From Podarcis pityusensis (taxonomy: Eukaryota), in assembly GCA_964106645.2 (NCBI GenBank), contig OZ067039.1: a stretch of 64,000 bases of DNA. One strand, 5' to 3'. Shown piece by piece: positions 655-59,141 of this stretch; positions within the stretch are counted from its first letter, which is position 1, and the number at the start of each line of letters is the position of its first letter. A model generated the notes under the pieces. The model saw nothing but the letters and a program-made list of their open reading frames with translations, ran no database searches and had not been told where the DNA came from. The translations under genes and the position numbers were made by a program.

Positions 655-742
655 ATTTCCAGGGCATGCTTTGAAAGAAGATGAGACTACCACCTCATAT
701 TTCCAGGGCATGCTCTGAAAGAACATGAGACTACCACCTCAC
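655..742. repeat. 44-bp tandem duplication
   Basis: ATTTCCAGGGCATGCT(T/C)TGAAAGAA(G/C)ATGAGACTACCACCTCA occurs twice in tandem. Confidence 0.95.
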
Positions 743-2134: not shown

Positions 2135-2520
2135 ACCATGCATTTAAAGTACATTCTCCCACCCCCAAATCCTGAGAACTACAGTTTGTCCCTCAGAGCT
2201 CCAATTCCAAGTAACCTTAACTAACTACAGTTCCCAGTATTCCAGGGTGCTTAAAATGTATTGTGTGTACATTGTCCAAATGGGCCTTTGGTTTGTTCTA
2301 GCAGGGCTCTTCTTATCGTCCATCTCAGGTGTCTCGGCATGACAACCTTGGGACATGAGAAGGGGAAGGGAAGCATTTCTTTCCCCTTTCCCCGGGGATC
2401 CATAGTTCTGAGAGACATGTTTGGAGCACTAGCCAACAATTCTGAGTGACCTCATCAAATTACAATTCCAAGAAATGTTGTGGGGAAGCCATGTCAAATG
2501 TTAAAATCACATAAACCCAG
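2135..2520. mobile_element. Degenerate MITE-like elements
   Basis: GAGAACTACAGTT...AACTACAGTTCCCAG and AAATTACAATTCCAAG motifs with imperfect inverted symmetry. Confidence 0.45.
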
Positions 2521-2944
2521 ATCAGATAAACCCTACATTTCTGTAGTGTAGATTCAGCTGGAGTGAGGGATGTGTTTCCTTTCCTTTGGAGGAAGGAAAA
2601 ACATTATGCACATCCTCTGAGAAACGTACATGTTTATTACTTAAAATATCCATGCGTTACTGAGTTGGGTCCTGCCTGGGGAGCCCGAGATAAGGACTTT
2701 TTGTACCCACATTTTTTTCCTCCCATCTGATTACTAGGACATGCTCTATGACAACACTTTGTAACCACCGGCTGGACTCTGTCCAGGCTTCCTTTTCACG
2801 TGTGAGTGTCCCATAATAATAAGCAGCCAGGCTGCAGGGTCAATCCATAATGAAGAGTTTCCATTGGTGAAAACTGAATCGTTTAGGGGAGCAATGGAGA
2901 AAAGGGCGGCGCGGTGAGAGGAGAGAAGCGGCTCCACTAGCCAG

Positions 2945-2961
2945 TGACCTCCGAGTGCCCT
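2945..2961 (-). promoter_or_regulatory. Candidate DR5 RARE
   Basis: Minus strand AGGGCA ctcgg AGGTCA; E-box CACGTG (~2797) and Meis-type TGACAG (~3091) nearby. Confidence 0.45.
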
Positions 2962-2992
2962 CACTTAACGAATTCAGATAGACAAAGCCACA

Positions 2993-2995
<3 letters not shown>

Positions 2996-3030
<35 letters not shown>
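2996..3030. repeat. (GT)n microsatellite
   Basis: Direct reading. Confidence 0.95.
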
Positions 3031-3031
<1 letters not shown>

Positions 3032-3631
3032 CTGCAGTACAACTGACCTGAAGGATAACATTTAAGGAGACTGACCGGAGCTTTTACTAGTGACAGCTCA
3101 GCAGCCCAAACTAAAGAGAAAGAATGAAGTCTTGCTAAAATTTGGAGCGAAGGAAGGAACTGTTTTGAATGCATGCCTCAAAGAAAGGTTGCAGCACTGT
3201 TAAGTGTCGTCTTGTGCTGCCCTTGCTCCAAGGCGTCGTTCATTCCCAACCTTTGTCCTACCACAAATCGGCAGGCCTTAGTAATCAAAACCCTATTCCG
3301 CAATGCTCAGGGGTGGAGAATGAACACAAAAGGACAGCAAGTAGAGGCGCCATTTAAGGAAAGTGATGATCGTCCTTCCCGGCGCCCCCCTCTACTCTGA
3401 CCCGTAATTCAGGCCACGTATGATTATTCTTGAAAAACACATTCCCCACCCCCACCCCTCACTCCACGAAGAGGTAGCCATGTTAGCCTGCTGCGGCACC
3501 TTGCATCCGATAGCATAGATCGTGCACTCTAACCCACGAAAGCTTTCCCATGATAAATTTGCTAGTCCTGTAAGTTGCTTCAAGACTCGTCGTTGTGTTA
3601 ACCTATATTTTCTCCCGTAGGAAAAATAAGC

Positions 3632-3662
<31 letters not shown>

Positions 3663-3982
3663 AGAAAGAGAGAGAGGGGGGGGAGGGAGGGAGAGACCAC
3701 CTTTATCCAACACTTATGTTCTATTTTTTATGACCTATAGTTAAAACAATGAAGTGACTCAAATGACAACGGCTCCTAATACCTCTTTGTGAACACATAT
3801 GGTTGTATCGCAGCATTCATGCTCCTTCGTCTTGGATGCATCCAAGAGCCGTTGGTCCTTCCTGGGTCCTGTCCCCATCCGCCCTACTCTAAAATCGCAT
3901 CCCTGGTAGAAAGGACAGGGGCTTCCAATGAAGGGCAAGCCTTTGCTGGTGTTATTGATGCCCCAAATGTAGATACAATCAA

Positions 3983-4252
3983 TCAAAGAGCTCCACTGAA
4001 GTACATCGTGCTGTTTGGAGGAGGGGTGGCTCCTAGCGCCTTCCCCGTCCTTCCCTGCCTACACAGGCTTGCGAGATTCTGACGAAAGAAAATTGTGGCC
4101 TCTCCAGACGAGAATTCATCAGTCTGGAACGTAGCCCTCAGGTGAAACTCGTCTGCCAGCTCCACCAACCACCTCCCCCTTTTTCTTTCCTTAAAAAAGC
4201 TTTTGGCTTTGGGGTTCCTTCCGGAGGTTAGTGGGTGGAGCTCAGCCTCAAC
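3983..4252 (-). pseudogene. HOXC3: Degenerate homeobox, most likely a HoxC3 remnant (exon 2)
   Basis: Reads ...KRGR-W-LVELADEFH...IFFRQNLASLCRQGRTGKAL against Hox3 consensus [20 protein letters not shown]...[19 protein letters not shown]. Same strand as the other Hox genes and 3' of HoxC4. W48 is lost and there are internal deletions. Confidence 0.68.
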
Positions 4253-5559
4253 CTACTGAGAACATGGGAGTTCCGAAGACGTTTAAGCAAGGATTTCTTT
4301 CCTCCAACACCCCAACCGGAGAAGTTCAGAAGCTCAAAGTTATCAGCCATGGATTTTCAGCGTGGAGGAGTACAAAAATAAATAAATCCAAGGCTAATAT
4401 TAACATCCATATTTGTGAGGGAGTGCAGTTGGCTACTGACCAATGAAAGATGGACGCTCTGCACTTGCTCAGGCTCCAGGGCTGAGAGGCATATTCGTAT
4501 GCTCCAGGGCTGAGGCCGGGCAATCCGGAAAACAGCAGCAATGCTATAGGTAGAAGATCACAGTATTTTCTGTACAGTCCACTTTCTAAATATATCTAGA
4601 ATAATCATTGTCTGTCTCTGTCCCTTACAGCGCAATCCTGTCTTCCAGGTAAATGCATATAGCTTAGTGTGTAGCACGGCTTGCAATGAATTTACTCCTA
4701 TTTGAGTGAAACTAGAACTTCAGCCCCCTGATCTTTAATAACGTATGCATTATTTTATGGTATAGGGTTGGCTGGACTTCAGAGACGGCTTCTCTTTCGC
4801 CCCCTCCCCACTCCTCAGAACAGTTTGTGGGTTATCTTTTTGCAGTTATTTGAGCTTTCTGGGTGCTTTGGTAACTCACGTCCCTTTTCTTGTTGGCATC
4901 TGATATAGTGAAAGACTTGCAAGTTTATGGATCTCAGAGTGGAGTGGGGAAAGGATAAACTAAATAAAGAATTCAGGCCAGGTTATCTGTAAAAATAAGG
5001 AATGTTAAGTTAACGTTGCTAACATCCTGTTCTATGTTGAATAAAGGAGAAAAATTGACAGAGAACGCCATTTTTTAGTCAATATTACAATCTATTGTGA
5101 AATCAAGGTCGGGTGCCAGACATCAGTGTGGTCTCCGCCTGTCTCCACACAACCTCCGCCCCTCTTTTCTTCTTTTTCTAGCATCCCTCAAGTCTTTAAC
5201 AGGGTGAGGGAAGGAGGTGGAGTAATCTGCACTTTCCTGGCCAAAGCAAATTTTTACAGTTGTAGTCATTGCAGCGTGGAGATCTGCAATCTATCTCAAC
5301 ACACACAGACCTCCTATCACTTTTGAAAATTCTTAGAAAGCATGGGCTGGTGCTTTGGTTACAATAGAGTCCAGGGTTTGACAGATCCTTTTCGACTTTG
5401 TACCACTTTTCAATGAATCGCCGGTTGGTTTTAAACGCATTTGACACCCCCCCCCAAGAAGTCGTGGGATTAAAGGTAGACAACCCCTAACAAGGGAAAT
5501 CGCTGTCTAAAAAAAGAAGCGGGATCTTGTTCTTCGGTGAGATAGTTGTGCGTGACACA

Positions 5560-5800
5560 ACTGAAGCTCTACTCGGGGAGACTTGGGTTCAAATCCTCGC
5601 ACAGCCACAAAATTTACAAGACTCGTCCTTTTCGAAAGCTTATTGAGTGAGCTTGTCGAAATAGAAAAATTCCTTCCTGTAGCACCTTAAAGACCAACTA
5701 AGTTAGTTCTTGGTATAAGCTTTCGTGCAGCCTAACCTACCTGATTAGATTGGTATGAGGATCAAAGGGGCCGACCATATACTTTGCCTTAAGCTGTGCA
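5560..5800 (+). mobile_element. MIR/CORE-like SINE interrupted by a Penelope-like fragment (5633-5727)
   Basis: B box GGTTCAAATCC at ~5586; the body CAGCCTAACCTACC...GTGAGGAT-like sequence resumes at 5728, after the insert. Confidence 0.55.
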
Positions 5801-8800
5801 ATTGATTAAACTAAAACTCAAAGTGAAGACTTGCCCAAGGCCACTCCAAAGAGCTTCCTACCCCACCAGAAATCTGAAGCTACTTTATAACCCCAACCCC
5901 CTTGAGCTAACTCACAGCTCATCGGCTGACGAAACTGCAGCATCAATAGGATACCCGCGTGAGTGAAGGAGCCACAACATATCAAACACTGCAGACAGAA
6001 CTTTCAGTGGAGTCAGTCAACTGCTCCTAATTCGGAGTGGTGGTCCATGTGTATGATAGCGAAGTAGGCCTTTTGGGGCTGCCCCAAACTGACCCTCTCT
6101 TGTTACCACACTCGTCCCAAATCCCAGCTGGACGCCACTTGCCCTTGGCGTGACCCTGCCCAGAAATCGATATGGTGTCTCAGTCCAATGGAGTTGCTTA
6201 ATTCATAAGAGAAGGCAAATAATTTAGTGGACAGAATAAGGGTTTTAAAAGAGTTCAGCAGTGCTAGATGACCGGTGGTCCATGTGACTAGTTCAGTATT
6301 GACCAGACCTCGATTTCAACCCAGATCTGTTCGATCAGGAGCACAAGCAGTGATATTTGGTCCAGAATCCTTAACTGAAGAGAAAACCCGATTCCCCACC
6401 CAATCCGCTTAACATGCACCTTATCCGCAACATTATTACGAGGTTTTTCACATGACAATCACTCAATGGGCGGTAAGTATTGTATGGTGAAACTATCGTT
6501 ACAATATTTGCATAGTCTAATACAAAGGTTGCCTGATGGTGTGGGTGGGTGTGTTTATACATACAGATTACATATATTTAGATAGGCCTCAAGACATTAT
6601 TAATTTCTGCTATCCGTCGACCGATGTATTAATTTGAACAAAGTCGCATAGAGTTACATTGCAGATTTAAACCATTTTCAAACCTCTTTAAAGTTAATTC
6701 CTCAAACTAAGGGGTCATTAGAAACGATGCTATTTGGAGAAGTTCATAGCACCTGCAGCAGTGCAGTTCCTGGGAATCTTTGGGAGGTATCTTTGGTAAA
6801 TGACTTTCAGATTGTTAACATTTGTTATGTAGATCCTCCAATGAATGCTAAGGGATGGATGCGTTGGCCTCGACCGCGCATTTACCTGGAAGTAAGTATC
6901 CGGGCTGTCAACTAAAGTGAGCTCCGAGTGTGCTCATGCTTCAGAACTGAGACTGGATCCCGCAAAGCACGTTTAAATCCCAGCCTCTTCCCGGTACCTT
7001 TTGTATCTTATGATACGACCAAAGAGGTGCTACTCAAAGCACTGCAAAGCAAGCCTACATCCTATTCAGCTCAGTGACACTTAAGAACATCCATAGGCTC
7101 TGGACGCAAGGATCCTGAAGGCACCATGTGCTATTGATTTGAATGACATGCCTTTCCACTTACTGGAGGATGTGTGCAAATCCCATTAATTTCAACGGTA
7201 CATAAACTTTCCACGGGTCTGGATTGCTCGCATTGCCAATAAAACAACACTGGTTAGGTGTGCCTCATACACACTCACCTTCCCATCCAAATCTCCAAAC
7301 TGTGCCGATTTAATTTATTCTAGGCAAGCTAACCGATCTTCCTATCTCAGGTTCTTCCAAACGCTAGGAGGCAAGTCCCCCAGAAATGTGTAGGGCTTAC
7401 TCCGGCGTAAACGTGCGAGGAATCCGGGTATTCTACTTGAAAGGCCAGCAAAATGACTGTCGTGGAATACCGACTGCCATCGGAATAATAAAGCGATGGG
7501 TTTGTTGGTCTGTTTCCCCAGCCTTCAGCATTTGATGATCACCTCTGACTCTGTTCTGCGACCATATGCTAACGTGCAGTCTTGAGTTTTTCGAGGTAAG
7601 GACTGCATCAGCATCCTACATGCAGGCGGCATAATTCAGGGGGCATGAATTTGAGGGTAGGGGCCAAGGTTTCCTTGGGGCACTAAGGGAATTTAACTGA
7701 AATGAATAGTTATTTCTCTTGGCTTTTATCGCTGCCCATCTTTATAGCTTGCTGGCCAAAACGTTGGGACCGAGTGGGAGAGGAGGACCGCTCTCAAACT
7801 CCTGCAGAGGGAATCACCTTTCACCAAAGCAGCGAAAACTGTAAAGTCAACTCGGAGATTGCTCACGAAGGGCTCGTATTTTTTCCTTTCCTTTCCTTTT
7901 TTTTTTTTTTAAGGACTCTCTGGCAGGTCGTCACAGAGAATCGCTGCCGGCTAATATCTGCAGCGAGTAACCAGCCAGAGACAGAAGAGAGGAAGACCGA
8001 AGACAGATAAGTCCAAAAAAGACTAAAGATGAAGCAATAGCAAAAGCGGGGGGCGGAGAGAAACTGGAAGGGTTTTTTTAAAAAACAAAAAAACAGGGCG
8101 AAGGACGGGTGTTCTCCCCATTTGGTGCGGGGAGAGTCTTCTTACAACGGCTGTGCCTAAAACCAGGCCGGATCCAGCTGCAAAGGTGTCTCCAGGTCAG
8201 CAGCACCCTCCTCCCGCCCCCTCTCTCTGCCCCCTTGGCTAGAAGTATGTGGGGCTCATCCGGACAAAAGGGTCAGGGAGTCGAAGAAGGATGAATGGCT
8301 TTTGAAAGATCCAGGCGGAACACGGACAAGCTGTTTCGTAACAAACGTCAGACGTGGCTGCTTGACCCGCAGAGACTAATGGGATTTTAGGAATGAAGAA
8401 GGAGCATTTCAGGAATGCCCACCCCCCTTGTATCTCCTTGTTTCCCCCAGTCGGTCTGATCTGATAACACCCACTCTGTGTCTGTGTGGGAGGTAGTATC
8501 TTTAATGTAACAAGTTAGATTGTGGACGTGTGGTCTTCCCCGGCTTCACTGTTTAGAAGGAAGAAGAGTTGTTTCCCTCCCTCTCTTTCTCTCTTTTTCT
8601 CTTCACCCAAAAAAGTCCCATGCCATCTATCTATCATCTATCTATCTATCTATCTATCTATCTCTCTATCTCGATCGACCGATCTAAAAAGATATAGATA
8701 GACGCAGGCGCGCACATAGCATAGCAATCGCACTCGCACAGGAAGGAAGAAGCATGTACAGGCCATGCGATCGCAGGCCCTGGAGCTGTGCTTGATTCAG

Positions 8801-9337
8801 CACACCACGCGGAGGGGAAGGGGGGCGAGTGCCTCTCTTCCCAAACATCTGCAGCCAGACATTTGATTTTTAGAGCTCGACTCTGCCAGACGTTCCCGAG
8901 GAGTCTTGCAAGGAATTCCCTCTCCGTAACAAACGCGGGCCAAGCCAAACCTCCACGGAACGTCACGCGATCCTTGCAAAACGTGGCCCAGTAAGTTTTC
9001 ATAGGCACATCCTCCTGATGTCCATGAGAACTTTTTGGGAAGAGGTGGCTAGAGGGGTGAAACTCCAGCCCACTGGATCCAAAGGCACTCGTGCCCAACT
9101 GGTACTCAGGACCACTGGGGTTGAATGGCACACAGGGAATGGGTTTGAACCTGGAACCCCTGGACACGGGAGAAAGTTAGTTCCAATGGCATTGGCTTCC
9201 TAGCAGTATTTATTTTTAAGTGAGGGGTTAAGGAGCAACTCTAGCCCATCCACACTGCAGAATTTTTGCCCTGGATTTTCTTCAAGTATGAATTGTTCTT
9301 TGCAGTCCTAGATCCAAGCAGAAGGGAAAAGATAATT

Positions 9338-12513: not shown

Positions 12514-12596
12514 GCAACTCCTGTGCCCACTTACCCGGGAGTAAGCCTCTCTGAGTTCAGGGGGGCTTACTTCTGAGTAGGCATACACAGGATTGC
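12514..12596. mobile_element. Palindromic ~85 bp MITE-like element (representative copy)
   Basis: GCAACTCCTGTG..ACTTACCCGGGAGTAAGCC..TGAGTTCA..GGCTTACTTCTGAGTAG..CACAGGATTGC is imperfectly self-complementary. Confidence 0.75.
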
Positions 12597-15500
12597 TCTG
12601 CAAGGTACAATTGTTTGAAGGTGGAGTCCAACTGAAGTCGACGGGACTTCCTTCAGAGTAGAAGTTCCTAGTATCGGCCCCTATTTCTGTCAGGGATCGT
12701 TCCCCTATCTCCCCCCCCCCCCTTAGTAGTTAACGTCCCATTGAGGTTTATCAAAAGTACAAAACTTCCATAACTTTGCCCCTCCGATTTCACAGAGCAA
12801 CTTTTTCTTAGGAATAAGTCTCGCTTGGAATCGCAACCTCACTTCGCATCTTCTGCGTCTGCTGCCGGAGCGTCCCTTTTAAATTCACACGCAACCTTCC
12901 CGTCCACCCAACACCCCCTCCCCAATTATTCTGGAAATAAACACTGCCAGCCATTAAAGACGTGTACAAACCAAGACTCCTTTTCATCCCCAGGATCTGA
13001 ACCGCTTAGCACATTTCATTCTGCTCCCCTCCGAGATAGCGCCTGCTCCACGCAGAGCCAGGGGCTAATCCAGGCACCTCCATACCCAGAGATCGCTTTC
13101 AAGAGACAGGAGGAAGATATACGGTCGCTCGCAAAGGCCCTTGCAAAGAGAGCTGTTAACTTGGCACTTTAAAAAAAAAAAGAAAAGCTGCTGAATAAAT
13201 TTTATACAACTTTGAAGGCAGCTTTTGGATCTGTTCCCTTTGGAAGTTTTTACACAGAGGCAAATTCCCAAACGCAAAGCTTTAGAAAATGTAATGAAAC
13301 CAAATGGAAACAAAATGCAATTGCAATCACAACTTGTGGCGGGGCGGGGGGGGGGGGTGGAGAGAGAATTGCCTGAAAACTGCAATTTCTTAAACTGGGG
13401 AGACAAGTTGGCGATGACTATCCATAGCAGGCAGACAGATTACCATGTGTATTTTGAAGGGATCCAACCTAAATAACACACACACACACATTTCATGCGC
13501 TGCAGAAGACCCACAGAATGACCTGGCTGTTCCCTTGCAGTCTGACTCATGGCTGTTCGATGTACTTCAATAGGATTTAGGACTGAAGCCTTTAAAGACG
13601 ACGCTATAGCTATCTAGTAAGCCGAATGCAACCTTAAGGGAGACCAAGGACTTGCAGAACAGCCTGAGAGGAGACTTAGACTTTCATACCCATTTTAAAT
13701 AATGTCACGTTTCTCATTACAAACCATTCAGAATGGTGGATTGGTATACCCTGCCCCAAACTTCCTTGGAGGTAAGTTCCAAGGGATGCAGAGCCGGAGC
13801 CGATCCATGGTTACTCGGAAGTAAGACCCGCTGAGTTCAATGAGGCTGGACTTACTCCCAGGTTAAGGTGTCTAGGTTTGTAGGCTTGTTTCTGCTAAGA
13901 TGTTTTGAACGTAGTCTGAGGATGCAGTCAGCCATGTCTTAAATAAAATGCGAGGGATCTAGAAAGCCCAAATCTACTATAAATTAAATGGAATTGCAAT
14001 CTTCCACACTCTTGCATGGCAGTAAGCCTGATCCGATAAAGGGGCATTTGTTGTATGCTAGAGCAGATGTTGGGAGAATTGCAACATCCACGCTCTCCTG
14101 TATCTAAGATTCAGGGTGCAATGTCCCAATCCCAAGACCCGCCAGCTGAACAGCCTTGGAGGCGTTACGTCCTCCACATTTTATTCCCAAGCAGGTCCTG
14201 CTTGCTGTCAGCGGAATCAACTTTGAGGTGTACGCGGGTATTACTCTCAAGTAGAAGCAAGTGCAACCTGATCCTATCCCTGTTTACTCAGAAGAAAACC
14301 CTATCGTTCCCCTCCAATGTGACCAGTGCCCCGTCCCTCAATATTATTAGTAGTAAGTCCCAATGACTTTAGTGAAAGTAGCTTTTATATAAAAGGTTCA
14401 AGAACCAACTGTCCAGTGACTCTGTTATTACCATGCCATGTGATAGTTTTTGTTAGCTGCAGATAGAACTACTAATTAATTAAAGTAGGTCTTTCCCTTC
14501 CTTCTATTTTTTAAAATACCTATCTATCTACAATATTACATACATACATACATACACAAATACACAAGCATTCTCAGTAATCTCAAAAGAAGGGAGGATT
14601 TCCAGGCATCCCTCCATCACGACAGACCCTGGCTAAAAGTTCTGCTTCCAGACTTTAGAGTTCTTGCCAAACAAGTAAATTAACCTGCTGCTCCAAACAA
14701 TCACCCCGAGATGATGTCGCTGCCCAACAACAAGACGCGCGTTCCCTCGTCAACCGACTCTTTGTTCTGCTGTCCAAATTCGGGGTCGTGACCTAGCTTT
14801 GAGCAGAAAAGGCAAACTCGCGAGTAAACATTTTAGGAGGGCTTCTTTAAATATTTATTAGAGGTGCCGTTCGGGAGGATTCGAGGAGGAAGTCAGGCTC
14901 GGAAGCGACTCCCCTCTAGCTCCTTGGTAGGGCCAGAGCACAATCCGCGGGATCGGATGCCTGCTGTGTCCTTCTGGGCGGATGATAACGCCAGTGTTGG
15001 CTGGGTTTGGATGGGTGGATGAAAGGTGGTGGTGGAGGAGGTGTCTTTCTTTATGGGCACATTTTATAAGCATGTTAAGCAAAGGGCCATAGATGGACGG
15101 ATAGACAGACAAATAGGCAGATCTGACTATATACGGTGGTTATAAATCCTTGCTCATTTTTCGAAGGCATGCATAAAGCGAAATGATTCCAACGTTTGGA
15201 AACATAAATATTCTGTTTTACTTCAGTTGCAGACATGCACATTCTACGCATACAATAATATATATATATATCTTTATGTATATCATGCACAAACGCTTGC
15301 ACACACATATAGCAGACGACCGTGTATGTGGAGCGGCTAATAAATCCAGATTGTACATTCAGAGCGAGAGAGAAGAAGGAAAGAGTCTACAAAAAGTTGT
15401 GCTGGGCCCGAATGCTTCCAGTCTTCCGGTTCAAGTGTGTAAAAACTGTTGAAATAATTCTTTGTGACGATGCATCTTAAAGCCTAAACATTATGCTACC

Positions 15501-18327: not shown

Positions 18328-20643
18328 CTTCCTTTTGCGTGTCTGTATTGGATCTCCTAAATAAATATCATGCTTTGTTTTCTGAAGCCTCATTCTTGCA
18401 TAAATCCTCAGAGCTAATACATATGCTTTTCCACAAAGGAAACCAAGCAGCATCAACATTTGGCTCTTGGTTGTTGTTAAGTACGCTTTTTTAACATATA
18501 GAAAAAGGAAAAAAGAAAACAAAGAAAGTGGCCTTTGCCAGAAATTGCTGATGCCATTAACAGAAGGGTGGTTGGCTGTTTGCAAGGAAATACTAGTCTT
18601 TCACTAAAGTCCCAAAATGTTTGGTTTGGTACCTTGCCCATCAAAATAAATCAAGGCGACAGATTAGGAAGTACATAAAACTATATCTCTGGATAATGAT
18701 ATACGAGACCACAATAAATATAAGTTACATGTTGGAGCTGCTGGCAGTTATGGTTAGAAACCCGTAACTCATTCATTTAACCCTGGCGGAATGTTTGTCT
18801 TTTAATTACAATTAAACAGCGTACTTGAACATTTCTCTCTCTCTCTCTCTCTCTCATATGAACTGCATGGAGAGAGACAAGAAGGAGAGACAGAAAGAAA
18901 AAGAGGGAAACTAGAGAAGATAAGAGACTGGAAAAATCCTGAGACATAATTTGCTAACTGGCAGCTTAGGGAGCTAAGCCACGGTACCTTATCCTATAGC
19001 ACTGCGGGGGAGGGGGGCTTGTCGAGAGGGAGAATGGAGAGGGGGTTTGTGGGGGGTTTAAGCGCACACATGTAATTGTGTCTTAAGTTGAAAACATCCC
19101 ATCCAGTTTTTTTATAGGTTTTTCTTTTTTTTTGCAATTGCCCCTTTTCAGAGAATTACCTCTCCAAACAATATTTGAAGCCACTGGAAATAAAAGGGAG
19201 TGGGGAACACAGCGTCTCCACAGCCATCACCACCACCCTTGGCCTCTTGGAAGTCCCATTGCCCATGGTGGGGGGGGGAGGAAGGGAGAGAATTTTTCTA
19301 ACGCATTATTTTGTGGCCACCGAAGCCCCTGTGAAGTGTTTCCTCCACTGCTGCTTCCTTGCTGTTGAAGAAGCATTGGTTTCCATCACCAAAACTTTAT
19401 TTATTTATTTATTTATTTATTTATTCACTCATTCATTAAAAAGGAAGAAATACAACTTATAATCAGTGTGACTTCACACAAACTGGGCGTCAGGGACTCA
19501 CTGGAGCGCTCCCGAGCAAGTCTCTAGGCTCCAAGGAGCTTATGACACCCCCTCCACAAACATTCTCACCTTTCGCCTGACTTCTCCTCCTTCTTCTTGT
19601 CCTCCTCCTCTCAAGAAGATAAGTGAAGAACAATAATCCGGGCATGATTTAATAGTGAAATCGATGCCATTCGAGAGGAGTAGAGGAGCCCAGCCCCTTG
19701 GTGCCATGCCCCAAGTGGGGGCAAGGAAGGAGCACAGACTTTGGTATCAAGAGGCGATCCATCCATTCGGTGGAGCGGGGAGCGATTTCCTGGAAAGCCC
19801 TGCCAAGACTACAGTCTTGAGCTCCCCAGGAGACCTAGGAGCACTGAACATCAAGTCCATCAGGTTTGAAAGAGGAGCCCATGGAAAGACCAACCATGCT
19901 ACTGGTGGTGTGACGATAGGCTTACTACCACCACCACCCGTTCTACCCGCCGAGGCATAGTGTGGAACAGCCAGCAACAGAGAACATTGATCCCTCACAA
20001 CTTTTCTTTTCTAGTTCCTAAGTGCCAGAGGAAATGTAGCTCTTTTGGGCTGTCCCTATAGAAACCATCAAGAGCGCCTGGTAGCACCTGAATAGACTAG
20101 CAGATTTCCCCACTTTACCCCTTTCCACTAAAGGAGACAATTTAAAAAAAAAGAAGAAGAAGAAGAAGCAACCATCGTCGCCATCATAGCTATGCGTTTT
20201 TAAACTGCTTTAAAAGAAAAAGAAAAACTTTTAAAGGAAACTTACTTGGCGTTGGGAACTTCGCTCTTGCCATAGGATAGCCAGCTGGGAAATCTTCCAA
20301 GCTATGGGAAGGCGGGAAAATGAGAAGGGAGGCTTGGCCGAAACTTCACCCTGCCTTCTTTTCTCTGGGGTTATTTTGGTGACAACACAATGAGATAACA
20401 CGCATTGAATCTGCCCAAACCCTCACTCTCTCCCGGCCGCCCTCCCCACCCACCCGGCCTTCTATTACTATGGTAATTAAAAAAAAAAAAAAAAAACCAC
20501 CACAAAAAAAGTCCAAACAGTGGCGATGCCTTTAAATGTGTGTAGGGAGCAGAGAAGGTACACGTTGGGAGACTTAACTCAGGTCACTGGGGGCTCGGAG
20601 GTCAGCCTGAGTGGCTAGAATAAAACTGCTGGCGTAGAAAAGT

Positions 20644-20660
20644 TGTCCTCTGGGTGAACC
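20644..20660 (-). promoter_or_regulatory. DR5 retinoic acid response element 3' of HoxC4 (neural-enhancer type)
   Basis: Minus strand GGTTCA cccag AGGACA, the same form as the 3' neural-enhancer RAREs of Hoxd4/Hoxb4; ~3.5 kb downstream of the stop codon. Confidence 0.85.
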
Positions 20661-23364
20661 TACTTTCCACCACCCCCCTTTACCCGAACTTCAATAAAGT
20701 AGCTTTCAGGCTCTCAACATGGAGGCGTCAAAAAGCTTTAAAAAAAAGAATGGGGAGAGAAAGAGCAAAATGGGTGAAGAGAGACGGTGGGGCAGGCTGT
20801 ATCTCATCACCTCCCCCCCCCCCGTTTCTTTTGCCCCTGCTGCCTGCCTTTATAATTCATTCATAATCTCCCTACCCTGGAAGAATTGTGTCATGGCCAA
20901 GTCTAAAGGCCAAATCAGATGCTGAAGAATCAGAATTATTAAACCAGAAACAAAAACGAAACAAAACAGGAGGGTGACAAGATTGCAGAAAGTAAACACT
21001 GAAGAGAACTCCAGGAGGAAAATAAATAAAATAAAGTTGGGGGGGGTAGAGAACCGTGGAAAGGAATATATGGTCATATATTTAAATATGAAGTTACTGA
21101 GAGGGTGCTGGTATTTTTAATTGAATATGCAAACTATACAGTTGCAAATGTGATTGATGCCTCCTTTTCCGGGCTTCCTAGGCAGACACAGAGAATGCAC
21201 GCAACACAAAGTCCTATCATATTCTTCCTGATTCTCTCACAGACACTTGGTTATAATTTATCAAGTTCTGCAGGCAGGGTGTGTGGGTGTGAAACTTAAA
21301 AAAAAAAAAAAGTTTAGCACAGCTACACACTCACACATAGTTTACCAAGTCACTACCAGTAGAAGCCATTGTAAATTTCACACGTGTGTGTGTCAGAGTT
21401 TGAAGATCAGCTTTGCAACATATGGCCATTCAGTTGGCAGCACCATTATTCCTAGGTTAGGATTCCCCCCTCCCTTTGTTCACTTTACCATTTATATGCA
21501 CAGAGTGCGTGTGTTTGTGTGGGTGTGTAAAAAAATGGGGGGGGGGGAGACTGGTTGCTGTTCTCTTTTATCTTACCCTAGCAATAGAGTAGGGAGACTA
21601 AGTCTGTGTAACAGAAGGGCAGATAAACAAGCAGACAGACACCTGGGAGATTTAACTTGCAGCCCTATCTTTGCATGCTTACTCAGAAGTAAATCCCACT
21701 ATGTTCAGTAAAGGTATTCTCTAAAATAAGTGAGTGAGATTCCTGTTTCCCCTCACTTGACCTAATGTAGTAAGGGTGAACAAGCAGGCCCAAGAGTGAT
21801 AAGAAAACATTCAAAGCAATTGCTAACATGCAAACTCAACATTCCCCTCGCTTGCTTCGAAAAACTGGAATTGTGAAAACACTGTTAAAGGTTTATGACT
21901 AGCTATTATGTTAATGAATGGATTTATTTCATACTATGCAAAAGGAGATGGAGTTTCTTCAAAGGAATACTACTAACAGGCAGAGAAGAGTCATCCTGAT
22001 TGGTTGATACCCATGACACTTTGACCATTAGCTTCTAAACTGATCTGGATTACAGCCACTATGTGTAATTCTGGCCTGCTTAAAATCAATAGAAGTTCTG
22101 CATTAACTTGAATGAGATGTAGATCGCTGCCATAATCTGTATCTTGTCAATCACTTCCTACCTCCCTGCCTCTTCCTTCTACCATGGGTGCTGAAAAGAT
22201 CTGCTTGTCTTGATAACTGAGGGAGGGGGCAAGATAAAGTGAGGGAACCAACTCCCCTTCAAACCCCCTGCCACTTTTCAGAACTTCTGCTTCCACCTCC
22301 AGTATATAGTTGCCTGGCTGTTTACTGATACCCATAACAGGGAACTGCAATACAGCTCAACCCACAACTTAGTTCTGTGTAAGCAGACTATTAAAGGCGC
22401 CTGAAATTTCATTGAAATCAATAGCAAATAAATTGGACTAGATCCTGCTACTTCAGACTAACTGGTTTCTAGTTTGGGGTGCTAGAATATTTACAAAATA
22501 CAACTAAACAACATTAAACAAGCCTCTAAGAGAGGTATAAACGAAAGCACACTTCAGTCACATGCTTTGCCACTCTGAGGCGAGGACAGTAGAAAAATGT
22601 GAGTTGTAAAAGGAACTTGCTAATCTGGCTGTCTGTCTATCTACCTATCCACACATATAAATAGTACATACTAAAAGTGCTCACTGTGCAAACACATCTG
22701 TATTACACTCTTCCCAGCCACCCTTTCTACTTCCCTCGGGGATGTAAACAAATCCTGAATTCTCTATTATCCGTCTCTATAAAATACCTACAACAGTGAC
22801 AATGTTAAGCATTTATTCAACGTACAGGAATAGGGGCTTGTTAGCTATACAGGCAGTAGAAGGAGGGGTAAAGAAAGCTCCAATATTTTTATTATTATTA
22901 CTACTACTAAAGAAATGGATAGGAGCTCAAATACAGGAAAGGACAGGTGCATTTTTAAAAAATAAACAACAGCAACACAAACCCTGATTTCTATGGACAG
23001 GTCTTCTACTAAAATGCACATTTACACCTCCCAAGGCTAGGACTTCCTAGTAGAATCTGAGGTCAAACATGCTGTGATGTCACAGGGTACAGTGGGTGCA
23101 AGCCACAGTCCCTAAAATCAATGGGAGATTTGCCACTGACTTCAGTGACATGCACTACGGTGCTGGTAGCCTTGTATTTAAAATAACAAAAAACCAACCA
23201 ACCCAAGCTTCTTAAACTTAGCTGAGAAAGTATCCACAGCTCAAGAAATCAGTGTTACACGTTTCCACCCCCCTCCCCCACGTTTTCCCTATATAGTATG
23301 AAGCAAAGAAGAAAAATAACTCACCAGACATTCCAAAGTCAAATCTGTGTCACACTCACTGGTT

Positions 23365-24205: not shown

Positions 24206-24558
24206 TTATAACCTTGTAATATCCTCTGCTCGTTGGTCCTGAGATGAGCTTTGCGAATGTTCTTCGCTAGCAACCGCGTTGGAAGAAGCAGGAATGGAAC
24301 TGGTGGAAGAATTGGTAGGAGCCGTAGATCTCACTTTGGTATTGGGCAGCCTGTGGTCTTTTTTCCATTTCATCCGCCTGTTCTGAAACCAAATCTTGAT
24401 CTGTCTCTCCGAGAGACACAGGGAGTGGGCGATTTCGATGCGCCTCCGCCTCGTCAGGTATCTATTATAGTGGAACTCTTTTTCCAATTCCAAGACCTGC
24501 TGTCTGGTGTAGGCAGTCCTGGATCGCTTGGGCTCGCCTCCATTGTAATTGGGGTTCA
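24206..24558 (-). CDS. HOXC4: Homeobox protein Hox-C4, coding exon 2 (homeodomain)
   Basis: Acceptor CAG|TG, then [35 protein letters not shown]...[14 protein letters not shown]...QRAEDITRL*, the HoxC4-type C-terminus. Confidence 0.98.
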
Positions 24559-24884
24559 CTGGGGGGAAAAACACCCAAAGATGAGCATGAATACAGAGAC
24601 AGAGAGAAAGGCAGGGGAAGGAGAGCGGAGAGAGAGATGCACAGGGAGAGAAAGACAGATCTCCAGTGGCTCAGGGGAAAGAGAGAGGGGGAGAGAGCGA
24701 GAGAAAGGGGGGGAGAGGAGAGAGGGGAGAGAGAGAGAGAAAAAAAGTCATCAGCTAAATGGGTTATAAAGAACCCAAGACTTTCTCTTCTAATAAGAAG
24801 GGGTTTCCCTGGCTTGAAAAGAGCCTGAATTATTTATGCACCCCTCGCGAAGCCTTTTGGAGTTTCACACATACATAACAGAAC

Positions 24885-24985
24885 GAACCACATGGCTGGG
24901 GCTGCCCAGACTAGCTTGGCTATAAAATTTATGGTGGGTGTAATTACCCACTCGGAGTCGTAAATCCAGCTCAATTGTGCTAACC
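24885..24985. promoter_or_regulatory. HB-1-like conserved intronic element of Hox4
   Basis: Clustered TTTATGG, TAATTA and TCGTAAA homeodomain/Cdx sites embedded in an otherwise GA-repetitive HoxC4 intron. Confidence 0.7.
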
Positions 24986-25228
24986 CAAAGACTCTCGTTG
25001 AAGGCAAAGGAGGAGATGGGAAAAAGAAGGAGCGAGAGAGGGAGAAGAGTGAGTGAGTGAGAGGGGAGAGAGAGAGAGCTTGCAAGCATGGTGTGAAGGG
25101 GAGAAAAACACACATACTCTCTCTCTCCCTCTCTCGCACTTACACACACACACTAGAGAGAGAGAGAGAGAGGAAGGAAGGAAGGAAGGAAGGGAGGAGA
25201 GAGGGAGAGAGAGAGAAAAGTTGCCTAC

Positions 25229-25682
25229 CAGTACTGACGTGGATTTTTTTCATCCATGGGTAGACTATGGGTTGCTTAGTGGCCGTGCTGCTAGGATGCT
25301 CGGGGTTTTGCTGGTTGCAGGCTGGAGGGGCTGGGGCTGGCGAGGTGGCTGCGCTGGAGAGAGCCGTTTGGTCACAGAGCTGCTGTGGTTTCTCGGGGAG
25401 ATGGTGGCCTCCGGGTGGTGGTCCATGGCCCCTTTGATGCGCTGGGGGGTTGCCGGGACCTTGGAGGCTGGCACAGCTGTACTGGCGCTCGGGGTAGCTG
25501 GGTCGCTGTGGAGGAGGTGGAGGGTACAATTCCTGGTGATGATGCTGAAAACTGGACTCCCTAGTCCGGCTGTAATATTCCGGACTGTGNNNNNNNNNNN
25601 NNNNNNNNNNNNNNNNNNNNNNNNNNNNNNNNNNNNNNNNNNNNNNNNNNNNNNNNNNNNNNNNNNNNNNNNNNNNNNNNNN
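25229..25682 (-). CDS. HOXC4: Homeobox protein Hox-C4, coding exon 1 (5' part inside N gap; start coordinate estimated)
   Basis: HSPEYYSRTRESSFQHHHQELY...KQPIVYPWMKKIHVST is visible at 25229-25589. Phase-1 donor G|GTAGGC. The start is extrapolated from the ~31 residues that usually precede HSPEYY in HoxC4. Confidence 0.92.
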
Positions 25683-25745
25683 NNNNNNNNNNNNNNNNNN
25701 NNNNNNNNNNNNNNNNNNNNNNNNNNNNNNNNNNNNNNNNNNNNN
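25590..25745. other. Assembly gap / masked run (N) covering the HoxC4 start codon
   Basis: 156 N. Confidence 1.
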
Positions 25746-27767: not shown

Positions 27768-27850
27768 CGTCGTCCATATACTCCCCTAGAGACGAATTTG
27801 TGATTGAGGCGCTCACACAACTTCGATTCTACAGGGTGCATATGAACGAC
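27768..27850 (-). ncRNA. MIR10C: pre-miR-10 family hairpin (miR-10c, HoxC-linked)
   Basis: Minus-strand 5p arm CACCCUGUAGAAUCGAAGUUGU (27838-27817) carries the miR-10 seed ACCCUGU. The 3p arm CAAAUUCGUCUCUAGGGGAGUA (27800-27779) is complementary. Position ~2 kb upstream of Hox4 is canonical. Confidence 0.95.
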
Positions 27851-29634: not shown

Positions 29635-31575
29635 AGAAGCAAAATGTGAAAATAAGGTTCTCTATGTTTACGCGAGAGTTTTTTGTTTTGTTTTTTAAGT
29701 ACACAGGAAGTGTAGACAGGATTGCATCTTTAATCATACACTTTTCTATTTATTTATTTTATAAAATATTTTCCCCAGTGGACTTGATCGCTCTTTCTTC
29801 ATTTCACTTCGTTCCTGTGATTTATTTTAACTGACCTTCTGCTTTCCTTGTTAAAATAGGCATTAGTCCCTTAAGTTTATATTTTTCTTAAAGCTATTTT
29901 GGGGGGGGGGGCATGTATTCCTCTCTTAAGTGTTTGGAAGAGTTCCCTTTTATTGTCTCTTTCAAAGAAGGCTCCAAGGACGTGTGGAAGGGGGGGGGGA
30001 ATTAGTGGGGCACAAACCTCTTTTGTCTCTCCAGTACCCCTCCCACTTCTCTCGGATTGGCCTCCGTTTCTCCCACCCGCAGAACAATGTCGGCAAAACC
30101 GGATTATTGCTATTATCATCATCGTCGTCATCATCATCATTCTGAGTGGCAATAGCGAAGGGAAATACACCACCTCGATTAAATAATTCCTGGCCCTTAA
30201 TTCCCAGCCTAGCCAAGAAGCGGGTTGCAAAGCTGGTGTGTCTATCTGGTTACCATTTTCAGGACCATTTCTGAGTACAAAGCGCCTACTTGACAGTACG
30301 GAAGAAAAATAAGTGTTCATTGTCCCCGCGGATTCATTGTGCGAGCCATTACCATACTGACCGCTTGGTAACCTACACCTCTAGCCATTTGCAATCTGTG
30401 CATGGGGGGGGGGGGGAGTGCCTAGCCACTGAGATTTTGCTATTTCATTGTTTAGTAATCATAATAATACTAATACGAAGCCCCTTGTCACGAAAGCCAC
30501 ATCCTAGCTAAGGTCACACGCATAACTACCTCCCCCTAAAAAAATGGGGAGACATACAAAATGATCAGTTCATAAAAAATCGGCTGCAGTCCAACTAAAA
30601 TTCACTGGGGCCATGCAGAGAGGACAGCCACCACCCCCCCACCAGTGTTTTAGATTCGGTGTATTATTCACTTATTTCAGTTTATTATAAGGCTTTAAAA
30701 TATATAGTATTAAAATACAGTGCTGAGAAGGAAGGTTAATCTTGAATGAATAATAATAAATATATATATTCCCCTCTGACTAAATATCCAGATCCAAGAA
30801 TGTATTTTCTGCATCGCCCACCCCCCGCAATTTGAAATTGGGTTCGCTCCTAACTTCAGTGCGTGTATTGTTAACCTCTTCTAGAAAATATCAACATCCT
30901 CTAAGAAGTTCAAAGAGTGGATTTTAAAAGTGTGTATTAAGGGAAGGGAGTCAAAATACAGCTATTTTTTTCTGGTGGAGGGGGTATATCTTTATAAAGT
31001 TGGTCTTTCTATGATACCATGAAACAATAAAAAATTAATTACACTTTCATTTGAAAACAAAAGTTAAAAACAAAAGCATAAAGTGCCACAAAGTCATTGG
31101 GTGTTCTCTCTCCCCCCCCCCGCTCCCCACAATGAAAAGAGACAGGTCTAATTTATGCAAAGAAATATGCAAATGTTTAATTGATTTTTCTTTAAATCTG
31201 TTGTCACTAAAAGTAATGAGTTGGTGCAAACCGATTTGAATAACCAAAGCATGTCACCAGAAGTAAAAAAATAATAATAATAAAAATACCCACAACCACA
31301 TATACACACATTAGCCCTTGTAGGTTCTCCAAAAATGCAAAAGCCTATAAATATTTATTCCTCCGTTTAAAACCCTTAAAAACGAACTCTTCCTGTTTGT
31401 TCGAAAAAGCACATATATGCAAACCATCTTCTCCTTCCCTCTTCCGCAAGCACCCCAACCCCCACCCAACCCCCATTTACCCCTCCCTCCCTCTCCCAGG
31501 AATTCAATTTTCTTCAAATCTCGTTGAAAGTGGCTTTTTAAAAAGTGGACGCATTTTAATATTGCTTAGACGGCG

Positions 31576-31592
31576 TGACCTGAATTTCACCT
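31576..31592 (-). promoter_or_regulatory. DR5 retinoic acid response element 5' of miR-10c/HoxC4
   Basis: Minus strand AGGTGA aattc AGGTCA, the same form as the upstream RAREs of Hoxd4/Hoxa4. Confidence 0.85.
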
Positions 31593-32127
31593 CAACTGTT
31601 TGACTTGATCCAATAGGTCACTGCCAAGGAGTTATTGATGGGGAACCTCCATTGAAATTTGTCTCCTCGCAAATGGCCTTTAGATCTTCTAGCGAGTTCA
31701 ATAACTAGTTATAATGTAGAAGGGAAAAAATGAAGCCCAAAGGCAAACGAATATGATGTTTCATTTTTATGCTGGAGAAATTGTTGGTTTTTCTTTTCCC
31801 TTTCCTTACACCCCCACCCCCACCCCATCCCATCCCACCCCTTTCACCCACTCAAAACAATAACAAAATCTGATTTGGGCGAAAGCATCGCCCCGCCCGC
31901 CTTCTCCTCCCCCCTCCCCGCTAGCCCGCTTGCTTCACCCTTTCAGCTGAAGCCAGATTCGAATCTATATTGCAAATCCATTTGTTTATTTATTTATTTA
32001 TTTAATTGGGGGGGCTAACCGAAGAGCTTCAGTTCATGAACTCTTCAAGACTGACCCTACTCGAGAGTCCATACAATAATTTTCAGCTGGGTAGGAATCA
32101 TGTTTGCTTTACTGGGGTGTTTTGTTA

Positions 32128-33239: not shown

Positions 33240-33326
33240 CCGCAACCCCACACCCACTTACCCGGGAGTAAGACCCACTGAACACAGCGGGACATACTTG
33301 TGAGTAGACATGCATAGGTTTGCGCT
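33240..33326. mobile_element. Palindromic ~85 bp MITE-like element
   Basis: Shares CCCACTTACCCGGGAGTAAG with the 12514 copy; ends CATAGGTTTGCG. Confidence 0.75.
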
Positions 33327-33721
33327 GTAGTGTTTTTTGCTACATTTTTAATGGATACTGAGAAATGAAAATTGAGGTTCCTTCTTCATGTGGCTGGAGA
33401 AGTCCGGAAGCTGATTCACACGGACCTGTGCTTCGTTCCCTGCCTCTCGCTGCGAAGAACTCTTATCTGCACGTCTGAACTGACTTTATTGAAAACTATG
33501 TGGATTTTTTTAAGACAATGGCAAGGGATATGAAAGCTCTGCCTGTGGTCCTTAGTCTCAGCTGATGTATGTAAATCGTCTCATGATGTTCCAGTTGTCC
33601 AGTGGTGAACACCCATGTGCAGACTCACCAGGACCTTCATGTGAAGCAGCTCTCGCAGAAAGCAACTGTCTGTCTCTGGATGGACAGTACTGTAACTGGT
33701 TTCAAGGTCCATGAGGCCACC

Positions 33722-44525: not shown

Positions 44526-44654
44526 NNNNNNNNNNNNNNNNNNNNNNNNNNNNNNNNNNNNNNNNNNNNNNNNNNNNNNNNNNNNNNNNNNNNNNNNNNN
44601 NNNNNNNNNNNNNNNNNNNNNNNNNNNNNNNNNNNNNNNNNNNNNNNNNNNNNN
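44526..44654. other. Assembly gap / masked run (N)
   Basis: Run of N. Confidence 1.
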
Positions 44655-50011: not shown

Positions 50012-50117
50012 TGTGCATGCACACGAAAGCTTATACCAAGAACTAACTTAGTTGGTCTTTAAGGTGCTACAGGAAAGAATTTTTTACTTCGACTATGGCA
50101 GACCAACACGGCTACCC
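50012..50117. mobile_element. Penelope-like element terminal fragment
   Basis: CACGAAAGCTTATACC...GTTGGTCTTTAAGGTGCTAC...CAGACCAACACGGCTACCC, typical of reptile Penelope ends; 54 bp identical (inverted) to 5674-5727. Confidence 0.65.
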
Positions 50118-51274
50118 ATCTATTACTGAATCCAATAACACTACTATATGAAGAAGAGGACGAAGAAGAAGAAGAAATCATAGATAGGCATAGAAGTCAT
50201 CTTTAAACGCATAGAAAGAGATTACAGGTTTCAAAAGGAGTAGAGGACTATTAGCTTTCTTATGTTGCACCTAAACCAGAGAAACTTTCGCAAATATCGT
50301 GCTTTATAAACCACACGTTGAAGTTTTGCGCAGCCCAGGGTTAAATCCTACCATTCTCTGCCCAACTCAGTCGTACTTGTTCTAGTGATCACACATACAC
50401 ACAGCGTCTCAGAAAGACCTACTGCCTTCACAAATCGCCCAGTTCTTGCACAACTTTCACTTAATGTCGATGGAAAGTTGTCTGAAGGGAGGGGCCGAGA
50501 GCCTAGCCCGGTAATTCTGTTCTACAGGGTTAAAAAGGCAATCTTATTTAGAAAGGTAGTCTTGCCTGCATCTGGACTATTAGATTATTGTAAACTGAAG
50601 GAAGGAATTATCAGGGAAAGAAACAAAGCGATCGTACGAAGACCTTTGGAGGACTTTTGAAGAACCCAGAACTATGTTGTTCAAACACTAGGACAGGTCA
50701 AGAATTGTTCAACAGTTCAAAAAAGAGGCATTCACTCCAGAAAGCTTGTGACGAGACCTACAACTGAGTACACATCACCCAAAGTTCTTTTATTGGGGAC
50801 GCAGCAGGGGCGACATAAGATACATAAAAGCCCAACCCATAGCCCATCCGAAGTTAAACACTAGGCTTTGACCGATTTCCACTGCAACCCTTGCTTGAAA
50901 TTGTTCCCCCGCCTCAATGGGGCTTACTTCCAACTTGCGTTTGAAGTAAATCTCATTGCGTTGAATGGGATTCTGAGCTTCATTCCAGAGGCTTGTTCCA
51001 TCCAAAGTTTAGCGCCTGGGAAGTCCCATCGATTTCATTGCAAGAGGTTTGTGCTAAACTCTCCCACTGATATCAATATGACTTCACAAGTGCTGAACTT
51101 TGGATGGCTCGTGCCTCAGACTGACGGGGATTTGTTCTCGTTTTACATATTTATATATTTGAAAACAATTGACAGCAAAATAACAGTGGAAGTGCGGGTT
51201 TGGAGACAGCGCTCGAGCAAAGGCACCTCATATACGTTTTTCTCCCGCACTCCAAAATTGGCCTTAGGTGTTGA

Positions 51275-53543: not shown

Positions 53544-53579
<36 letters not shown>

Positions 53580-57588: not shown

Positions 57589-57933
<345 letters not shown>

Positions 57934-58634
57934 TTAGTTAACAGATTTGAAAATAAAATGCTTAAATAAAAGAAAACAGACACACAACGAAGCCCGTCAG
58001 CCAGGCTTTCCCCAACCCCACCCTCCACACTCAGTCTTCATTGTCATCCACCGACCAACTCCCCCCCCCCCAACCCACTGCACAATTTAATTCTGTGCCT
58101 TAGTCTTACTACCCATTAAAATCATGCAGCACACATGGAGGATTGGGGGGGTGTCTAATTGAAAGCATGTTCCTATCTTATTTGCAAAGATTCAGAATGT
58201 GTTGTTTTAATTATTTCTGCAAACTTGAAAAAAAAATCCAATTAGATTTTACTCCAATGCTGCTTTAATTACTAGGAATAGACACTCCTTCCATATATTA
58301 TGAAGTCAAGCTACTTCATAAATCCCCCAGCTGTTATTGGACCTGTTATTGGACAAGACACTTTGCAATTTTTTTGCCTTAATAAAAATGCCCTATCTCA
58401 CCTATCAGGGAAAATACATTTTTTTAAAAAAAAATCAAAAACACATCACTTCTATTCTACACCTTATTTCCACCACCCCCTCCAAGGGAAAAAAAATCAG
58501 AGCTGATTGCACTTTATTATAGATATTTTACACTCTCGAAGTCTTTTAATTAGAAAGAGCATAACAAGCCATATTCGCTTGCAACAACTTAACAAATAAA
58601 AGGCCTGTAGCGGCAACTGTGAGGAAGCTATATT

Positions 58635-58700
58635 ATTGTTTTTATGGGGCCATAAAAAGTAGCTGAGCCTGTTCTGCTAGGGAGACGGTCGTAAAGATGG
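58635..58700. promoter_or_regulatory. Hox/Cdx site cluster in HoxC6 intron
   Basis: TTTTTATGG-GG-CCATAAAAA inverted pair plus GTCGTAAA. Confidence 0.6.
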
Positions 58701-58741
58701 TTCAGTTTATTTAATTTATCTCTGCAAGCTGTAAAACTTAC

Positions 58742-59141
58742 CACTGTGGGAGTTCATGCGCTGCATCCACGGGTATATTTGAATGCTAGTTTTCTGTTCC
58801 TGGGATGTGCTCCTGTTTTGGTCACTTGTAAAATCCTGTGCAATGGAAGTTTGTGTATTGTGTCCCATAGAATTTTGCCTGCAGCTAGAGAGCATGTCTT
58901 TTTCTTGATAAAAGGCATTAGATCCGTAATCATATGGTCCCCGACTGGAGCTAAACACAACATTATCTTGCGGTGAATAAAAAGGAGATGAATAGATCCT
59001 GTTTTGAGCAACCGCTGCTCCATAAGTTGAAAAATGCCTTACAGGGTCATAAGCAGAGGAATTGATCGCCACGTTGGGCAGGACCTCTTGACCACTGGTG
59101 AGGTGGCAAGACAACGACGGGTTTGTGAAATAGGAATTCAT
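58742..59141 (-). CDS. HOXC6: Homeobox protein Hox-C6, coding exon 1 (400 bp)
   Basis: Translation [14 protein letters not shown]...[14 protein letters not shown] has the Hox6 N-terminus and hexapeptide. Phase-1 donor G|GTAAGT at 58742/58741. Confidence 0.97.

What the first reader, a model, noticed from the sequence alone, without database searches (positions are those of the whole stretch)
3983..4252. Decayed HoxC3-like homeobox at the expected position 3' of HoxC4
Seen: the minus-strand frame gives KRGR-W-LVELADEFH-(20 aa)-QN-LASLCRQGRTGKAL. Known: Hox3 homeodomains read [20 protein letters not shown](28 aa)-QN-RRMKYKKDQKGKGM, whereas Hox1 has LTEL and KQKKRE. The 14 residues after QN align without gaps to Hox3, many by small codon changes (K>R, K>Q, K>T, G>A), and GK is kept. 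I found no intact Hox3 homeobox between here and HoxC4. Inference: HoxC3, lost in mammals but reported as retained in many squamates and amphibians, has decayed independently in this lineage. Standard annotation would miss it.
Basis: partly seen in the sequence, partly recalled or inferred. Interest (0 to 1): 0.85.

Follow-up and report, generated by a model that had tools for sequence, protein, structure and literature searches.

The report
Probable HoxC3 fossil in wall lizards
In a wall lizard (Podarcis), the stretch where the body-patterning gene HoxC3 is expected holds only faint, broken traces of it, which suggests an unreported old loss of a gene that all lizards and snakes are said to keep, though an intact copy just outside the window could not be ruled out.

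Summary
The window is the HoxC6-HoxC5-mir-10-HoxC4 region of a Podarcis lizard. The 89-codon minus-strand frame at 4252-3986 is as described, about 20 kb 3' of HoxC4, and no intact Hox3 exon lies between. Pfam, PDB, phmmer, Atlas and nhmmer give no significant homeobox hit. Helix 1 chained with the C-terminus gives P about 0.004. The C-terminal trace is out of frame and past the stop, helix 3 is destroyed, and one congener carries two 1-bp insertions in the frame, so it reads as a pseudogene. Substitutions among congeners are scarce there (3 of 40, P 0.013). RNA contigs are sparse and unspliced. I could not fetch a real HoxC3 or see left of the window, and a paper reports HoxC3 in the related Darevskia. 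Verdict: old HoxC3 exon-2 remnant, about 0.68. The scan noted this same stretch once more, not on other DNA.

The parts
3983..4252 (-). 89-codon stop-free frame plus stop; holds the homeobox-like remnant; not kept in one congener
4142..4168 (-). Helix-1 trace LVELADEFH, 3 base mismatches to the degenerate code of Hox3 LVELEKEFH
   Evidence: p about 0.015 in 24 kb
4034..4081 (-). QN plus 14 codons, weak trace of helix 3 and tail after a net 8-codon deletion; the W-F and R-R-M-K core is gone
   Evidence: 21-23 of 48 bases, p 0.02-0.10; blocks not significant
3850..3873 (-). Trace of the near-invariant Hox3 C-terminal motif GRIQEAPK, read as DRTQEGPT with 4 single-base changes; out of frame with the 89-codon frame and past its stop
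   Evidence: only hit at 4 mismatches or fewer on either strand of 64 kb
4253..4277 (-). Candidate splice acceptor region (pyrimidine-rich, AG before 4255 and 4252), about 85 nt upstream of helix 1, a spacing like that of Hox3 exon 2; use not shown
   Evidence: inference
8600..9030 (-). Candidate exon-1 trace (YEN-like start near 9003, at the CpG peak); best chain in the interval but not above chance
   Evidence: P 0.57-0.69
2633..2638 (-). First AATAAA downstream of the remnant, where the CpG-rich block (about 2500-9000) ends; circumstantial
24206..25589 (-). HoxC4 (exon 2 and the readable part of exon 1), the synteny anchor; start lies at the N gap 25590-25745, left unfilled
27773..27845 (-). 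mir-10 precursor between HoxC5 and HoxC4 (miR-10c position)
   Evidence: PMC9498476
52584..54028 (-). HoxC5; exon 1 is 98% identical to Podarcis raffonei and 97% to P. muralis, which identifies the genus
57589..59140 (-). HoxC6 (approximate start)

Best explanation
The stretch is the decayed second exon of HoxC3, a unitary pseudogene. Shown: three short Hox3-like blocks lie in the right order and strand about 20 kb 3' of HoxC4; they are not in one frame; the DNA-recognition helix is destroyed; the frame is broken in a congener. Inferred: after selection on the protein ended, substitutions and deletions removed most of the exon and all recognisable exon 1, so no DNA-binding HoxC3 protein can be made from here. 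Inferred: the loss is old, since even the best blocks differ from the Hox3 code at roughly 14-22% of informative bases on one lineage, while alignable Hox intergenic DNA differs by about 15% between Podarcis and the worm lizard Rhineura over both lineages; it probably predates the Podarcis radiation and may be shared with other lacertids. The scarcity of substitutions among congeners may mean that the DNA now serves a non-coding role; that step is the weakest.
For: Helix-1 block p 0.015, top peak of the window, chance 0.01 by pattern. C-terminal motif: only hit at 4 mismatches or fewer in 128 kb of strand, 295 nt downstream; top of 142 tiles, p 0.007. Chain of both: 43.0 bits against null 34.7 +/- 2.2, P 0.004; real-sequence controls 32.5-34.4. 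QN register p 0.02-0.10. Hox3 profiles beat Hox4-6 profiles. No intact Hox3 in 1-24200. Two 1-bp insertions inside the frame in organism D. CpG-rich block 2500-9000 ending at the first AATAAA, like a gene body. Dating scale.
Against: No standard search is significant; a whole-homeobox forward score gives only P 0.06-0.5. The C-terminal block was one of 15 tried (p 0.03-0.1 after correction) and the chain parameters were set after seeing the site. No exon 1 above chance. No true HoxC3 was available, so it is not shown that tetrapod HoxC3 ends in this motif (the Atlas cluster for teleost Hoxc3a lists no DUF4074). Papers say squamates retain HoxC3 (PMC3038165) and report it in the lacertid Darevskia (PMC9498476). 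The cluster runs far beyond the window (PMC6791295).
Confidence: 0.68

Rival explanations
1. Chance resemblance in CpG-rich, possibly regulatory intergenic DNA; the real HoxC3 is intact and lies left of the window.
For: All standard searches blank. By protein profile the site is only rank 6 of about 306. The other homeobox blocks are jointly not significant (Fisher p 0.24). P. muralis HoxC cluster is 305 kb (PMC6791295), and the HoxC4-HoxC3 gap is called putatively very large (PMC4470032). Darevskia is reported with 41 Hox genes (PMC9498476).
Against: Two Hox3-specific blocks, each the best in 64 kb, in order and 295 nt apart, P about 0.004. The Darevskia call rests on a best BLASTP hit with a gecko sequence in a cluster split over scaffolds, and the PCR survey tested only gecko, dibamid and cobra, no lacertid.
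Confidence: 0.2
2. A fast-evolving HoxC3 derivative that is still expressed and translated, with a shortened homeodomain that no longer binds DNA in the usual way.
For: Net in-frame deletions keep 89 codons open; organism E has 1 of 34 substitutions inside the frame (P 0.002) and none is listed for D or E in 4051-4189; low-depth RNA contigs from two studies overlap the frame.
Against: Organism D has insertions behind 4192 and 4050 that change the frame and the C-terminus. No splice joint; RNA depth about 2, unspliced across 4189, and it may be DNA. No annotated protein matches. Frames this long cover 9% of local codons. No exon 1 or start found.
Confidence: 0.07
3. A decayed local duplicate of HoxC3 exon 2, with the working copy further left.
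For: Reconciles the Hox3 traces with the reports of HoxC3 in lacertids (PMC9498476).
Against: Local duplications inside vertebrate Hox clusters are very rare (own knowledge); nothing here points to a second copy.
Confidence: 0.04
4. A remnant of HoxC1.
For: Also 3' of HoxC4 and prone to loss (PMC3038165).
Against: The downstream trace is the Hox3-specific C-terminal motif; helix 1 has LVEL; HoxC1 is reported intact in lacertids, with a 9 kb intron in Darevskia (PMC9498476). No Hox1 sequence was fetched, so there is no direct test.
Confidence: 0.01

Closest known systems
HoxC3 of squamates, amphibians and lobe-finned fishes (PMC3038165; expressed in chameleon, bioRxiv 10.1101/2024.09.03.611012)
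   Same: Position and strand 3' of HoxC4; Hox3-type helix 1 and C-terminal traces
   Different: No intact homeodomain, no WFQNRRMK core, blocks out of frame, no detectable exon 1; not compared directly because no HoxC3 sequence could be fetched
HoxA3, HoxB3, HoxD3 (fetched: L033, L073, L085, L107 and proteins P0101-P0220)
   Same: LVEL-E-FH helix 1, a QN with a G-K tail, and the GRIQEAPK-like end, in the same order
   Different: Helix 1 to C-terminal motif is 295 nt here against about 640 nt in these genes; all else is unalignable
Decayed Hox genes left in place, such as the HoxD12 remnant of caecilians (PMC4470032) and non-functional HoxC1 and HoxD12 of snakes (Feiner and Wood 2019, recalled from memory, paper not held)
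   Same: Unitary pseudogene at the syntenic position in an otherwise intact cluster
   Different: A different gene and lineage; I found no paper reporting a HoxC3 pseudogene in any lizard, within a library that lacks most subscription papers

Membership tests
HoxC3 ortholog (intact gene) | 60-residue homeodomain with WFQNRRMK recognition helix | tested here: not met
HoxC3 ortholog (intact gene) | Exon 1 with MQK-x-x-YY start and FPWMKE hexapeptide upstream | tested here: not met
   only a non-significant candidate near 9000
HoxC3 ortholog (intact gene) | Spliced mRNA and one frame through to the C-terminal motif | tested here: not met
   RNA data are shallow contigs, so expression is not excluded
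HoxC3 unitary pseudogene | Same strand, 3' of HoxC4 in the HoxC cluster | tested here: met
HoxC3 unitary pseudogene | Sequence similarity to paralogy group 3 above chance and above other groups | tested here: met
   modest: chain P 0.004, Hox3 above Hox4-6; standard searches are not significant
HoxC3 unitary pseudogene | Disabling lesions | tested here: met
   deletions in the homeobox, stop before the C-terminal trace, frameshifts in organism D
HoxC3 unitary pseudogene | Best match is HoxC3 of other squamates, with shared flanks | not testable with these tools
   walks from HoxC4 reach only 10 kb; no HoxC3 among the hits
HoxC3 unitary pseudogene | No intact HoxC3 elsewhere in the genome | not testable with these tools
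   only 24 kb 3' of HoxC4 is in the window; cluster is 305 kb in P. muralis
HoxC1 remnant | Hox1-type residues and no Hox3 C-terminal motif | tested here: not met
   LVEL and a GRIQEAPK-like trace; no Hox1 profile was available

The most novel reading that the evidence does not exclude
HoxC3 was lost long ago in the lacertid line, perhaps in its common ancestor with worm lizards, a third amniote loss that overturns the published view that all squamates keep it; part of the dead exon has since been kept under non-coding constraint and may be transcribed at a low level.
Probability: 0.25. Interest if true: 0.72.

Novelty: new member of a known kind. Interest (0 to 1): 0.55.

Why it matters
HoxC3 presence has been used as a character for amniote relationships, on the count that squamates keep it and that two losses (mammals; turtles with archosaurs) explain the rest (PMC3038165). 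A loss inside lizards would add a third, correct the Hox inventory of Podarcis, a much used laboratory and field lizard, and question the 41-gene count for Darevskia. It would give a datable natural knockout to compare with lizards that keep the gene. Hox pseudogene remnants are themselves a known kind of thing, so the surprise is the lineage, not the mechanism.

Tried and rejected
Pfam, PDB, phmmer on 1.84 billion representatives and the ESM Atlas: blank. Profiles from the window's own HoxC4-6: no signal. Fetching a real HoxC3: walking from HoxC4 loci of tarpon, eel and skink stopped short at 10 kb; a metagenome scan gave HoxA3/B3/D3 and invertebrate Hox3 but no HoxC3; a length-limited search with HoxA3 exon 1 listed 120 of 149 hits, none HoxC3. 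Anchor alignments for a profile search were dropped because MAFFT misplaced the fragments. Exon 1 by published primers, BLAST, nhmmer and a three-block chain: nothing above chance. Two key papers were not held. I rejected the open frame as evidence of function and the RNA contigs as evidence of expression. Human material: P0067 is named human and was excluded. Contig L066 looked mammalian on first translation, could be human, and was left out of every later comparison. A few unnamed mammal-like proteins entered pooled profiles; their contigs were not fetched. The N gaps at 25590-25745 and 44526-44654 were neither filled nor looked up. The reads tool did not refuse the stretch.

Full report
Setting. 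The minus strand carries three intact homeoboxes with their first exons, HoxC6, HoxC5 and HoxC4, and a mir-10 precursor at 27773-27845. HoxC5 exon 1 is 98% identical to Podarcis raffonei and 97% to P. muralis, and the DNA differs from P. muralis by 1.5-3%, so this is a Podarcis wall lizard. The finding lies about 20 kb 3' of the HoxC4 stop, on the same strand. At least five related species hold the stretch.

The observation. No intact Hox3 homeobox or first exon lies between it and HoxC4. No standard tool recognises it: Pfam, PDB, phmmer over 1.84 billion proteins and the Atlas are blank, and nhmmer finds only the 25-29 bases of helix 1 at E 9.2 (HoxC4-6 model) or E 1.7 (HoxA3/B3/D3 model). 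The open frame is not evidence by itself, as 9% of local codons lie in frames this long.

Is it more than chance? I fetched Hox3 comparators and tested block by block. Helix 1: the degenerate code for LVELEKEFH at up to three mismatches hits the three real homeoboxes and 4142-4168 only, with 0.01 hits expected per shuffled window. A DNA profile of 48 Hox3 homeoboxes ranks the site first of about 310 other peaks in five of six settings, p 0.015 for the 24 kb where HoxC3 could lie. Those comparators were retrieved with that motif, but it is also invariant in the Hox3 proteins found independently through exon 1. The N-terminal arm, loop, helix 2 and helix 3 blocks are not significant. A whole-homeobox forward score gives P 0.06-0.17 with vertebrate Hox3, 0.36-0.53 with all Hox3, and 0.8-0.99 with Hox4-6.

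A second trace outside the finding. 39 of 42 full-length Hox3 proteins end in the same 14 residues. The code for their core, GRIQEAPK, matches 3873-3850 with four single-base changes (read DRTQEGPT). It is the only hit at four mismatches or fewer on either strand of the window, and it lies 295 nt downstream of helix 1. As a 14-residue block it tops 142 tiles (p 0.007), but it was one of 15 blocks tried, four of them highly conserved, so p is 0.03-0.1 after correction. Chaining the whole homeodomain profile with this block scores 43.0 bits against a null of 34.7 +/- 2.2 (P 0.004, 1000 simulations; real-sequence controls 32.5-34.4). The parameters were set after seeing the site, so I read the overall p as 0.004-0.01. 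This motif is specific to group 3, which argues against HoxC1. Whether tetrapod HoxC3 ends in it I could not check; the teleost Hoxc3a cluster (276 residues) lists no DUF4074, though a short protein of that kind would fit the short spacing seen here (inference).

Gene or pseudogene? The C-terminal trace is in another frame and past the stop. The recognition helix has lost its W-F and R-R-M-K core, so a product could not bind DNA as a homeodomain does (established knowledge). In organism D, single-base insertions behind 4192 and 4050 break the frame or swap its C-terminus. RNA-like runs of organism F give three contigs of 151-195 nt at depth about 2, with no splice joint, one running unspliced through the candidate acceptor at 4189; they may be DNA. 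Against plain neutrality: organism E has 1 of its 34 substitutions in the frame, which is 22% of the stretch (P 0.002); pooled over D and E it is 3 of 40 (P 0.013), or 5 of 45 with indels (P 0.046). That hints at constraint on the DNA, but rests on two species and could reflect patchy ancestry. Exon 1 was not found; the best candidate ends near 8953 at the CpG peak but is no better than chance. The CpG-rich block of about 2500-9000, ending at the first AATAAA (2638), looks like a former gene body (circumstantial).

Age. Alignable Hox intergenic DNA differs by about 15% between this window and the worm lizard Rhineura and by roughly 20-30% in the less conserved parts from a skink. The best surviving blocks already differ from the Hox3 code at about 14-22% of informative bases on one lineage (my count), and the rest is unalignable. 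If decay was neutral, it began well before Podarcis species split, perhaps near the lacertid and worm lizard ancestor (inference). A hint only: a rate study dropped its worm lizard for HoxC3 without saying why (PMC4470032).

Against what is known. Liang et al. found HoxC3 in cobra, gecko and dibamid, took Anolis from earlier work, and concluded that all squamates should have it (PMC3038165); no lacertid was tested. Chameleon expresses it. Darevskia is reported with 41 genes, but HoxC3 was not found by functional annotation and was placed by a best BLASTP hit with a gecko sequence in a cluster split across scaffolds (PMC9498476). Feiner and Wood 2019, which may have scored P. muralis, was not held. 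The P. muralis HoxC cluster spans 305 kb, so there is ample room for an intact HoxC3 left of the window. That is the main open risk.

Verdict. Probable old HoxC3 exon-2 pseudogene (0.68); chance with an intact gene further left (0.20); divergent but still coding (0.07); decayed duplicate (0.04); HoxC1 (0.01). It is a new member of a known kind, a Hox remnant left in place, and its interest is that it contradicts the published inventory for lizards. One TBLASTN with a real HoxC3 would decide it.

Noticed in passing
window 48119-48094 (-); L001:15777; L122:15835: A mini-exon starting MDPWRD followed by a GTAAGT donor, about 4.5 kb 3' of HoxC5, identical in P. muralis and Rhineura. It resembles the MDP-x-R-x-Q start of short HoxC4 isoforms without exon 1 in turtle and coelacanth (P0087, P0062), so it may be a conserved alternative first exon giving a hexapeptide-less HoxC4. 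P. muralis has a 105-residue product annotated from it.
   Followed up: partly
window 27773-27845 (-): mir-10 precursor between HoxC5 and HoxC4, the known reptile miR-10c position.
   Followed up: yes
window 18507-18834, 14607-14868, 30181-30403, 20613-20730, 31545-31781: Conserved non-coding blocks: the first three are 82-92% identical to a skink, the last two are also found in tarpon or eel; likely HoxC enhancers.
   Followed up: no
window 53545-53593 (-): Glutamine-rich repeat in HoxC5 exon 1 just before the hexapeptide; lacertid HoxC5 is about 20 residues longer than turtle or bird HoxC5.
   Followed up: no
window 5665-5727 and 50022-50084; 12524-12600, 33251-33327 and five more; 50988-51117: A young 63-nt repeat pair (98% alike, inverted), an older dispersed repeat family, and a long imperfect hairpin: probably small mobile elements inside the Hox cluster.
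   Followed up: no
window 25590-25745 and 44526-44654: N gaps; the first covers the start of HoxC4 exon 1.
   Followed up: no
window 655-741: 44-bp tandem duplication, 95% alike.
   Followed up: no
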